A stretch of DNA of 63,820 nt, filler included, from Octopus bimaculoides (lineage: Eukaryota): the NCBI RefSeq assembly GCF_001194135.2. It is 5 parts of 5 records of this genome, joined end to end, with 100 filler letters (N's around TTAATTAATTAA, not from the genome) between each part and the next. Parts side by side here need not be neighbours in the genome. Positions count along the whole stretch, not along the records: positions 1 to 21,380 come from NC_068988.1; 4 more parts are not named here. The stretch is one strand, 5' to 3'. Below the pieces are notes generated by a model, which saw nothing but the letters and a program-made list of their open reading frames with translations, ran no database searches and was not told the DNA's origin. Positions within the stretch are counted from its first letter, which is position 1. Every line of letters starts with the position of its first letter. The position numbers and the translations under genes were made by a program. Below, in pieces: positions 17,053-17,292 of this stretch.

Positions 17053-17292
17053 ATGGCTGGTGTCCATCCAAAAGTACGGATCAACCAAGCAAGAGAAATG
17101 ATGATCTTAAAGCTGCATCTTGAACAGCTGCAGCGAGAGATTGCCATAGATCGACGTCCTCTAACCGAGACATTGGTGGAGATGGTGGCATTTTGTCAGG
17201 ACCAACACCACGATGATCCCATCCTGAATAGGGATGAACCGAAAAATATCTACCCACCGCATAAAAGACAACAGTTTTGTCCTTTGATTTGA
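17053..17292 (+). CDS. Heterotrimeric G-protein gamma subunit-like protein (GGL domain, 79 aa, CaaX CPLI), CDS in a single exon
   Basis: EQLQREIAIDRRPLTETLVEMVAFCQDQHHDDPIL aligns without gaps to the G-gamma pattern EQL..E..I.R...S.....L..YC......DPLL; typical length; terminal CaaX; strong start context gagATGg; no stops or frameshifts. Confidence 0.88.
   Translation: MAGVHPKVRINQAREMMILKLHLEQLQREIAIDRRPLTETLVEMVAFCQDQHHDDPILNRDEPKNIYPPHKRQQFCPLI

What the first reader, a model, noticed from the sequence alone, without database searches (positions are those of the whole stretch)
17053..17292. Divergent G-protein gamma-like gene with an uninterrupted CDS
Seen: an intact 79-aa ORF with the gapless G-gamma core, DPxL and CaaX. 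Established: vertebrate GNG genes split the CDS with an intron near R-x-K|VS, and the C-terminal NPF/NPW motif contacts G-beta. Here there is no coding intron, NPF becomes NIY followed by PP, the helix after the Arg is remodelled (RRPLTETLVEM) and a QHHDD patch precedes DPIL. Inference: a retro-derived or intron-lost, lineage-specific G-gamma that may pair with a particular G-beta and serve a specialised GPCR pathway. This is the best lead for new biology in the window.
Basis: partly seen in the sequence, partly recalled or inferred. Interest (0 to 1): 0.72.

Follow-up and report, generated by a model that had tools for sequence, protein, structure and literature searches.

The report
Divergent single-exon G-protein gamma gene
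The 79-codon reading frame is a real but highly diverged member of the ordinary G-protein gamma-subunit family; its lack of a coding intron is common in this family, and whether it is expressed or specialised could not be tested here.

Summary
The ORF at 17053-17292 (+) is exactly as described: 79 codons, an in-frame stop one codon before the ATG, a DPIL motif and a C-terminal CaaX box (CPLI) followed directly by a stop.

It is homologous to G-gamma. Pfam PF00631 gives E=1.4e-4, but 22.2 bits is below the 27.1 gathering score. Human G-gamma-2 aligns almost end to end. The only three relatives in 1.84 billion proteins (39-43% identity) all pass Pfam's threshold. The AlphaFold model has the G-gamma two-helix-plus-tail topology.

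- "RRP..." and the "DQxxDD" patch recur in the nearest relatives.
- Uninterrupted G-gamma coding sequences occur in a butterfly G-gamma-1, an amphipod (residues 3-68) and marine metagenome relatives.
- Octocorals and Limulus keep a mid-CDS intron.

No retroposition hallmarks were found. What remains unusual is the degenerate N-P-F/Y/W motif (NIY-PP) and a long, unplaced branch outside the canonical arthropod G-gamma-1 clade.

Orthologues, expression and G-beta pairing could not be tested, because the tools hold no mollusc genomes or RNA-seq.

Verdict: most likely a functional, divergent G-gamma paralogue, a new member of a known kind. A young pseudogene is not excluded. Interest is modest.

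The parts
17053..17292 (+). Complete coding sequence of a divergent G-protein gamma subunit (79 codons plus TGA stop at 17290-17292), in a single exon
   Evidence: ORF listing and sequence; Pfam G-gamma E=1.4e-4; G-gamma-2 alignment over residues 18-78; only G-gamma-like locus in the piece by tblastn; GC 0.45 against 0.29 upstream, codon-position GC 0.60/0.30/0.45
17047..17049 (+). In-frame TGA one codon upstream of the ATG; rules out an N-terminal extension by read-through
17025..17034 (+). T8 run followed by AG (17033-17034): a possible splice acceptor of a 5'UTR intron, 18 nt before the ATG. Inference only.
   Evidence: Sequence; pyrimidine fraction 0.65 in the 20 nt before the AG, so it fell below the 0.7 cut-off used; no transcript data
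17046..17123 (+). Out-of-frame upstream ATG (7 nt before the main ATG) opening a 25-codon overlapping uORF. It could dampen translation if included in the mRNA.
17068..17148 (+). Residues 6-32: predicted N-terminal helix. Its hydrophobic 3-4 spacing (M16, L19, L23, L26, I30) corresponds to the coiled-coil helix that pairs with the G-beta N-terminus in known G-gamma proteins. Holds the invariant E24 Q25 L26 R28 E29.
   Evidence: AF2 model, block pLDDT 86-90; invariant columns
17161..17205 (+). Residues 37-51: second helix (LTETLVEMVAFCQDQ) after the D33-R-R-P36 hinge. An ancestral mid-CDS intron would fall here, between E43 and V45, and none is present.
   Evidence: intron positions mapped in octocoral and Limulus homologues and transferred through the alignments
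17215..17226 (+). D55-P56-I57-L58, counterpart of the conserved DPLL motif
17245..17259 (+). N65-I66-Y67-P68-P69: degenerate counterpart of the N-P-F/Y/W motif
17278..17289 (+). CaaX box C76-P-L-I79, immediately followed by the stop; predicted prenylation site, preceded by basic K71 and R72
   Evidence: Cys column invariant; relatives end CKLI, CQVI, CDII, CPLQ
17318..17593 (.). Context, not part of the gene: an interspersed-repeat fragment starting about 26 nt after the stop (copies at 2356-2492, 2682-2737 and 5523-5562), then (AC)23. No AATAAA/ATTAAA occurs before 18145.
16470..16804 (.). Context: an assembly gap (N run) only 248 bp upstream of the ATG. The promoter and any 5' exon cannot be read.

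Best explanation
17053-17292 encodes a complete, divergent G-protein gamma subunit from a single coding exon. By analogy with solved G-beta-gamma structures, the inferred mechanism is as follows. The long N-terminal helix (residues 6-32) forms a coiled coil with the N-terminal helix of a G-beta. The second helix (37-51) and the DPIL segment pack on the beta-propeller. Cys76 of the CPLI box is prenylated (probably geranylgeranylated, given the terminal Ile), the last three residues are removed and the Cys is methylated. The lipid, together with the adjacent K71/R72, then tethers the G-beta-gamma dimer to the membrane for GPCR signalling. The gene lies outside the canonical arthropod (protostome-type) G-gamma-1 clade and is not a clean GNG13/G-gamma-30A orthologue. 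It is a fast-evolving paralogue with a degenerate N-P-aromatic motif. Shown here: homology, completeness, topology and absence of a coding intron. Inferred: expression, G-beta binding, prenylation and selection.
For: Homology: Pfam PF00631 E=1.4e-4 over residues 19-61. G-gamma-2 chains are the best PDB sequence hits, residues 18-78 against 17-76, with the Cys aligned. Exhaustive HMMER finds only three relatives (E 9.6e-6 to 2.1e-4, 39-43% identity), and all three pass Pfam's gathering score at 43.6-61.6 bits. The profile search reaches named G-gamma proteins. Completeness: stop codon one codon before the ATG, purine at -3 and G at +4, CaaX followed by a stop, GNG2 aligned in one block. Topology: AF2 gives helix 6-32, a hinge at DRRP, helix 37-51 and an extended tail, mean pLDDT 71.5. 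Constraint: the ORF keeps 8 of 11 columns that are invariant in its 10 relatives, with conservative S>T and L>I at two more, against 14 of 55 variable columns (hypergeometric P=0.004). Substitution-only neutral drift to 45% identity keeps an open frame plus Met1 plus Cys76 in only 0.8% of simulations, before counting indels. Composition is coding-like.
Against: The Pfam score (22.2) is below the gathering cut-off (27.1). Foldseek places G-gamma chains first, but not significantly (E 0.7-1.0). The N-P-F/Y/W motif, nearly universal in the family, is not intact. No orthologue and no identical protein exist in the 15-billion-protein collection, so the ORF appears unannotated and there is no evidence of conservation or transcription. 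An out-of-frame ATG lies 7 nt upstream. A repeat begins 26 nt after the stop and there is no nearby poly-A signal. The constraint test is partly circular, because homology was detected through those same conserved columns.
Confidence: 0.6

Rival explanations
1. It is a non-functional copy: a retrocopy or duplicated G-gamma gene that has lost expression or function recently and still has an open frame. Its unusual residues (NIY-PP, long branch) would reflect relaxed constraint, not specialisation.
For: Lowest family score of all relatives (22 bits against 44-62). Degenerate NPF motif. Long unplaced branch. No annotated identical or orthologous protein. The ORF is embedded in repeat- and microsatellite-rich DNA, with a repeat 26 nt after the stop, no close poly-A signal and an upstream out-of-frame ATG.
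Against: Met1, the open frame, the CaaX Cys and the stop directly after CaaX are all intact. Retained residues are enriched at invariant columns (P=0.004), and the simulated chance of surviving long neutral drift is under 1%. No poly-A tail or target-site duplication marks a retrocopy. Other Pfam-passing G-gamma proteins (P0002, P0007, P0010) also lack N-P-aromatic. The missing orthologues mean little, because this genome's raw ORFs are not in the collection.
Confidence: 0.27
2. It is the source organism's one-to-one orthologue of the animal-wide GNG13 / Drosophila G-gamma-30A (eye and sensory) class, simply fast-evolving, and therefore an already known gene type.
For: [quoted passage not shown] The ORF's best relative P0001 matches human GNG13 at 39% identity, E=3e-11. 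GNG13 is the bootstrap sister in 23% of replicates. The tail pattern DPxLNxDxxKN resembles GNG13's DPFLNPDLMKN.
Against: ORF against GNG13 gives no BLASTP alignment, and its Smith-Waterman score of 71 is lower than against GNG2 (82). It scores 88 against a remembered, unverified G-gamma-30A sequence, whereas G-gamma-30A against GNG13 scores 158. The class hallmark NPW...KGKC is absent. Placement is unresolved.
Confidence: 0.1
3. It is not a free-standing G-gamma: either a chance ORF, or a GGL-domain exon of a larger protein such as an R7-family RGS.
For: Open frames of this length are common in this repeat-rich piece. An AG at 17051-17052 directly before the ATG could in principle be a splice acceptor.
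Against: Homology statistics. N-terminal stop, full-length alignment to 65-75-aa G-gamma proteins and a terminal CaaX plus stop, whereas RGS GGL domains are internal and lack CaaX (background knowledge). No DEP, RGS or other coding matches in the neighbourhood.
Confidence: 0.03

Closest known systems
Canonical G-protein gamma subunits of the GNG cluster (for example human or bovine G-gamma-2 in solved G-beta-gamma structures; octocoral 'gamma-7-like' P0006 and P0008)
   Same: Length; helix-hinge-helix-tail topology; the E-Q-L-x-R-E and I-x-R motifs; F/Y-C in helix 2; DP(I/L)L; a basic pre-CaaX stretch; the CaaX end. GNG2 aligns over residues 7-71.
   Different: Only about 28% identity to GNG2. 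N-P-F is replaced by NIY-PP. The tail is longer between that motif and the Cys. There is an N-terminal extension of about 6 residues in helix 1. The octocoral genes carry a phase-2 intron in the Asp after KVSKSVE, which this ORF lacks.
Uncharacterised G-gamma proteins from marine metagenomes (P0001/P0009 group and P0002/P0007/P0010 group)
   Same: These are the best matches anywhere (39-43% identity). They share EQLQRE, the RRP hinge (P0001) and the D-Q-x-x-D-D patch. The P0002 group also lacks N-P-aromatic (NLS/NLP), and P0010 also has Pro at CaaX a1 (CPLQ). Their CDSs are uninterrupted.
   Different: Source organisms are unknown. They pass Pfam's threshold and the ORF does not. P0001 keeps NPY. 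The P0002 group ends in Q, a farnesyl-type CaaX.
GNG13 / Drosophila G-gamma-30A sensory class
   Same: Divergent small G-gamma proteins used in sensory cells. The tail shows the DPxLN-x-D-x-x-KN spacing. P0001 links the ORF to GNG13.
   Different: The ORF is no closer to GNG13 than to GNG2. It lacks NPW and the KGKC end.
Protostome G-gamma-1 (for example Papilio, Limulus, Daphnia)
   Same: Family membership. Papilio G-gamma-1 likewise has a single-exon CDS.
   Different: The hallmarks RIPVS...D(C/Y)LL.GF...NPFREKSSC are absent. Scores are 20-25 bits against 32-42 for the divergent groups. The ORF did not group with this clade in any of the listed bootstrap sister groups, which cover about 97% of replicates.

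Membership tests
G-protein gamma subunit (Pfam PF00631 G-gamma/GGL) | Statistically significant sequence homology to the G-gamma/GGL domain | tested here: met
   Pfam E=1.4e-4. PDB G-gamma-2 E=4e-4. E=9.6e-6 in a library of 1.84e9 proteins, to proteins that themselves score 43.6-61.6 bits on PF00631. Caveat: the ORF's own 22.2 bits is below Pfam's curated 27.1-bit gathering score.
G-protein gamma subunit (Pfam PF00631 G-gamma/GGL) | Small free-standing protein (about 65-80 aa) with N-terminal coiled-coil helix, hinge, second helix and extended tail | tested here: met
   79 aa bounded by stops. AF2 gives H6-32, a hinge and H37-51 plus a tail. The Foldseek match to G-gamma chains is top-ranked but not significant.
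G-protein gamma subunit (Pfam PF00631 G-gamma/GGL) | C-terminal CaaX prenylation box at the very end of the protein | tested here: met
   C76-P-L-I79 followed by TGA. The Cys column is invariant in the alignments. Actual prenylation was not tested.
G-protein gamma subunit (Pfam PF00631 G-gamma/GGL) | DPLL-type motif after helix 2 | tested here: met
   D55-P-I-L58 is aligned to DPLL.
G-protein gamma subunit (Pfam PF00631 G-gamma/GGL) | N-P-F/Y/W motif in the tail. It is near-universal but not strictly defining: the Pfam-passing P0002, P0007 and P0010 have NLS/NLP. | tested here: not met
   The ORF has N65-I-Y67-P-P69, and no register restores N-P-aromatic.
G-protein gamma subunit (Pfam PF00631 G-gamma/GGL) | Obligate dimer with a G-beta subunit | not testable with these tools
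   No multimer prediction or G-beta sequence of the source species is available. Needs AlphaFold-Multimer or co-purification.
GNG13 / G-gamma-30A class | Closer to GNG13 than to GNG-cluster proteins, with an NPW...KGKC-type tail | tested here: not met
   No BLASTP alignment to the validated human GNG13. Smith-Waterman 71 against 82 for GNG2. The tree is unresolved.
Protostome G-gamma-1 | RIPVS / DCLL-GF / NPFREKSSC signature and clustering with arthropod G-gamma-1 | tested here: not met
   Signature absent. Lowest scores of all groups. Not found in that clade in the bootstraps.
GGL domain of R7-family RGS proteins | Internal domain flanked by DEP and RGS domains, with no CaaX | tested here: not met
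   Stop before the ATG and CaaX plus stop at the end. No other domains in the flanks.
Processed retrogene | Lacks the parental introns, with a 3' poly-A remnant, flanking target-site duplications and an identifiable intron-bearing parent | tested here: inconclusive
   There is no coding intron, but there is also no poly-A tract before 18778, no target-site duplications and no parent available. Intron absence is common in bona fide G-gamma genes.

The most novel reading that the evidence does not exclude
A lineage-restricted G-gamma whose remodelled G-beta-contact tail (NIY-PP in place of N-P-aromatic, with a longer basic pre-CaaX linker) gives it selective pairing with one G-beta (for example a G-beta-5-like subunit) or altered membrane dynamics. 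It would serve a specialised sensory or neural GPCR pathway in the source animal, probably a cephalopod.
Probability: 0.12. Interest if true: 0.55.

Novelty: new member of a known kind. Interest (0 to 1): 0.3.

Why it matters
If expressed, this would add an apparently unannotated G-gamma subunit to the signalling repertoire of its species. It would also be a natural example of a G-gamma that tolerates loss of the N-P-aromatic motif, which is useful for understanding G-beta-gamma pairing specificity. It also illustrates that short single-exon genes can be missed by annotation. It does not change how G-protein signalling is understood, and the intronless structure is ordinary for this family.

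Tried and rejected
- Word-indexed homologue search with the ORF alone found nothing.
- Exact-sequence look-ups of the ORF found nothing. Look-ups of ten other raw window ORFs also found nothing. This genome is therefore not ORF-called in the collection, and 'no orthologue' carries little weight.
- The broad profile search returned 589 G-gamma proteins, but the 120 listed are arthropod or metagenome sequences with no mollusc. The planned lophotrochozoan phylogeny could not be done.
- The JGI metagenome DNA scan yielded only one locus, an octocoral-type spliced transcript.
- Foldseek against the PDB was not significant.
- GNG13-class membership was considered and not supported.
- Retrogene hallmarks (poly-A, target-site duplications) were searched for and not found.
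- Rfam and ARAGORN found nothing in the piece.
I inspected stop-to-stop frames instead.
- Literature searches for cephalopod G-gamma genes, intronless G-gamma genes and GNG gene structure gave nothing specific.
- The source organism could not be identified with the tools. An octopus-like origin is only my recollection of its repeats.

Full report
**1. Observation**

The window holds an ATG-initiated ORF at 17053-17292 on the + strand. It encodes the 79-aa protein MAGVHPKVRINQAREMMILKLHLEQLQREIAIDRRPLTETLVEMVAFCQDQHHDDPILNRDEPKNIYPPHKRQQFCPLI.
- An in-frame TGA at 17047-17049 lies one codon before the ATG.
- The start context is GAGATGG.
- The protein ends in the CaaX box CPLI, followed directly by TGA.

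Length alone is not evidence. This repeat-rich piece has 23 ATG-ORFs of at least 79 aa, against about 2 in shuffles, and most lie in microsatellite-like DNA. The ORF does stand out compositionally: GC 0.45 against 0.29 in the 248 bp upstream, with codon-position GC of 0.60/0.30/0.45. It is unique within the piece.

**2. Is it a G-gamma?**

- Pfam's only hit is PF00631 (G-gamma/GGL): E=1.4e-4, residues 19-61. The 22.2 bits is below the curated 27.1-bit gathering score.
- Against all PDB sequences, the top hits are G-gamma-2 chains (E about 4e-4), aligned over residues 18-78 against 17-76 with the CaaX Cys in register.
- tblastn aligns human GNG2 residues 7-71 to 17074-17289 in one block. No other G-gamma-like sequence exists in the piece.
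- An exhaustive HMMER search of 1.84 billion representative proteins found just three relatives at E<=1e-3: P0001, P0002 and P0003, at 39-43% identity. All three pass Pfam's G-gamma threshold at 43.6-61.6 bits.
- A profile of these sequences reaches named G-gamma proteins: octocoral 'gamma-7-like' and an amphipod G-gamma. A broader profile finds 589 family members.
- Smith-Waterman scores of the ORF against GNG2, GNG13, insect G-gamma-1 and the three relative groups all have z>=9.8, with 0/500 shuffles reaching the observed score.
- AlphaFold2 with an 11-sequence alignment gives helix 6-32, a hinge at D33-R-R-P36, helix 37-51 and an extended tail (mean pLDDT 71.5, about 90 in helix 1). This is the G-gamma topology.
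- Foldseek ranks two G-gamma chains first, but not significantly (E 0.7-1.0). That is expected for a peptide that folds only on G-beta, so I count the fold test as inconclusive.

Overall, homology to G-gamma is established. The ORF is the most divergent member seen here.

**3. Which G-gamma?**

The literature, citing Krishnan et al. 2015, describes one GNG-cluster orthologue in protostomes plus one GNG13 orthologue in nearly all animals. I validated my recalled human GNG13 sequence against PDB 25st_G, a 100% match.
- P0001, the ORF's best relative, matches GNG13 at 39% identity, E=3e-11.
- The ORF itself gives no BLASTP alignment to GNG13.
- The ORF scores 71 against GNG13, 82 against GNG2 and 74 against Papilio G-gamma-1. 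It scores 125, 118 and 109 against P0001, P0002 and P0003.
- In a bootstrapped NJ tree the ORF is a long branch. Its sister is the P0001 group in 24% of replicates, GNG13 in 23%, the octocoral group in 21% and the P0002 group in 14%. None of the listed sister groups, which cover about 97% of replicates, is the arthropod G-gamma-1 clade.

So the ORF lies outside the canonical arthropod (protostome-type) G-gamma-1 clade, is not a clean GNG13-class member, and cannot be placed further with the data available.

**4.

*(a) No coding intron.* This is true, but not special.
- Octocoral G-gamma-7-like genes have a phase-2 intron in the Asp codon after KVSKSVE (L008, L009).
- Limulus G-gamma-1-like has a phase-0 intron two codons further on, after EDLK, plus one after residue 5 (L012).
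- Papilio G-gamma-1 is a contiguous 213-nt CDS (L013).
- The amphipod P0012 has residues 3-68 in one exon (L010).
- P0002 is uninterrupted on Tara METAG contigs, next to a second eukaryotic ORF.
- L007 carries two different uninterrupted G-gamma paralogues in tandem.
- The metagenome examples are biased, because an ORF caller can only recover uninterrupted genes. At least one 'metagenome' contig (L011) looks like a spliced transcript. The butterfly and amphipod cases are not affected by this.

Intron loss in G-gamma genes is therefore recurrent.

*(b) 'Retro-derived'.* I found no poly-A tract before 18778, no target-site duplications and no donor site inside the ORF. A T8-AG at 17025-17034 could be the acceptor of a 5'UTR intron, but that is inference.

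*(c) 'Remodelled' RRPLTETLVEM and the QHHDD patch.* P0001 has ERRPISEAIKEL and DSQNDD, and P0002 has DQQQDD. These are subfamily traits.

*(d) NPF.* The motif is degenerate in every register: NIY under NPY, or YPP under NPF. However, the Pfam-passing P0002, P0007 and P0010 have NLS/NLP there, and P0010 also has Pro at CaaX a1. The ORF is therefore not alone in this either.

**5. Gene or pseudogene?**

For function:
- Met1, the frame, the Cys and the stop right after CaaX are all intact.
- The ORF keeps 8 of the 11 columns that are invariant in its ten relatives, with S>T and L>I at two more. It matches the majority residue at only 14 of 55 variable columns (P=0.004).
- Substitution-only neutral drift to 45% identity preserves an open frame plus Met1 plus Cys76 in 0.8% of simulations, before counting indels.

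Against function:
- It has the weakest family score of all relatives.
- An out-of-frame ATG sits 7 nt upstream.
- An interspersed repeat begins 26 nt after the stop, and no poly-A signal occurs for 850 nt.
- There is no evidence of transcription or of orthologues.

The absence of orthologues is weak evidence, because none of ten raw ORFs from this window is in the collection. The genome is represented, if at all, only by annotated proteins, and this ORF is not among them. I put a functional divergent G-gamma at about 0.6 and a recently inactivated copy at about 0.27.

**6. Mechanism (inferred from established G-beta-gamma structural biology)**

- Helix 1 has hydrophobic residues at M16, L19, L23, L26 and I30 and would form a coiled coil with the G-beta N-terminus.
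- Helix 2 and DPIL would pack on the propeller.
- Cys76 would be prenylated. A terminal Ile, as in CKLI, CQVI and CDII of relatives, suggests geranylgeranylation.
- The dimer would then be anchored at the membrane with help from K71/R72.
- The altered tail might change G-beta preference or dimer stability. This is untested.

**7. Context**

The piece is AT-rich eukaryotic DNA.
- It has many microsatellites and three assembly gaps, one of them 248 bp upstream of the ATG.
- It carries degenerate LINE fragments and several interspersed-repeat families.
- No conventional gene lies near the ORF.
- The repeats remind me of octopus SINEs. That is memory, not a test, and the source organism was not identified.

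**8. Verdict**

This is a new, very divergent member of a known family, and the 'uninterrupted CDS' hook is ordinary. Interest is modest (0.3) unless expression and selective G-beta pairing are shown.

Noticed in passing
window 11206-11902 (+): Degenerate non-LTR retrotransposon. An endonuclease/exonuclease/phosphatase domain ORF (11206-11727) overlaps a reverse-transcriptase fragment in another frame (11615-11902). It is truncated by the assembly gap at 12160.
   Followed up: partly
window 19250-19973 (+): Two adjoining frames (…VDSFHYLGEQA / …SETWAMTAEDMCRLERNE…RRLHWYGHV…) look like the C-terminal part of a LINE reverse transcriptase, with a frameshift near 19630. Pfam gave no hit.
   Followed up: partly
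window 14642-14785, 20318-20477, 21151-21377; also 4674-5045 and 5932-6402: Several diverged copies, direct and inverted, of one interspersed repeat. Translated frames recur as 'GRASSCRN.AK.DWSLV' and 'FLQLDALPN'.
   Followed up: partly
window 14351-14392 and 15013-15054: A tRNA-tail-like motif CTGAGTTCAAATCC…TTTGCCTTTCATCCT in two copies. From memory it resembles an abundant octopus SINE, which hints at a cephalopod origin. ARAGORN and Rfam report nothing.
   Followed up: partly
window 15224-15350 and 15589-15734: A tandem duplication of about 365-384 bp, seen as four collinear repeat pairs at 82-89% identity.
   Followed up: no
window 17318-17593: An interspersed-repeat fragment starts about 26 nt after the G-gamma stop codon (copies at 2356-2492 minus strand, 2682-2737 and 5523-5562), followed by (AC)23. 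The first AATAAA is at 18145.
   Followed up: yes
window 1-362 and 1517-1767: Long compound (TATG/TATA)n arrays at the start of the piece, and an imperfect (GTGATGATG)n / (ATG)n array. These create long spurious ORFs.
   Followed up: no
L007 70-285 and 1551-1766 (Logan ERR3026434): Two different octocoral-type G-gamma paralogues in tandem, both with an uninterrupted CDS. The Xenia and Paramuricea genomes have the same tandem pair, at least one member of which (P0008/P0006) carries a mapped coding intron. This is possibly intron loss in another cnidarian, or an unusual transcript.
   Followed up: partly
L003 528-749 and 925-1467 (also L004, L005; Tara and other marine metagenomes): The divergent G-gamma P0002 is followed 175 bp downstream, on the same strand, by an RGG-repeat-rich ORF. 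This suggests a compact-genome marine eukaryote of unknown identity that carries an NPF-less, farnesyl-type (CSLQ) G-gamma.
   Followed up: no
L011 123-599: A 'metagenome' contig at 113x coverage encodes the octocoral G-gamma-7 with the exon junction already joined. Some metagenome contigs therefore behave like cDNA and cannot be used to infer intron absence.
   Followed up: yes
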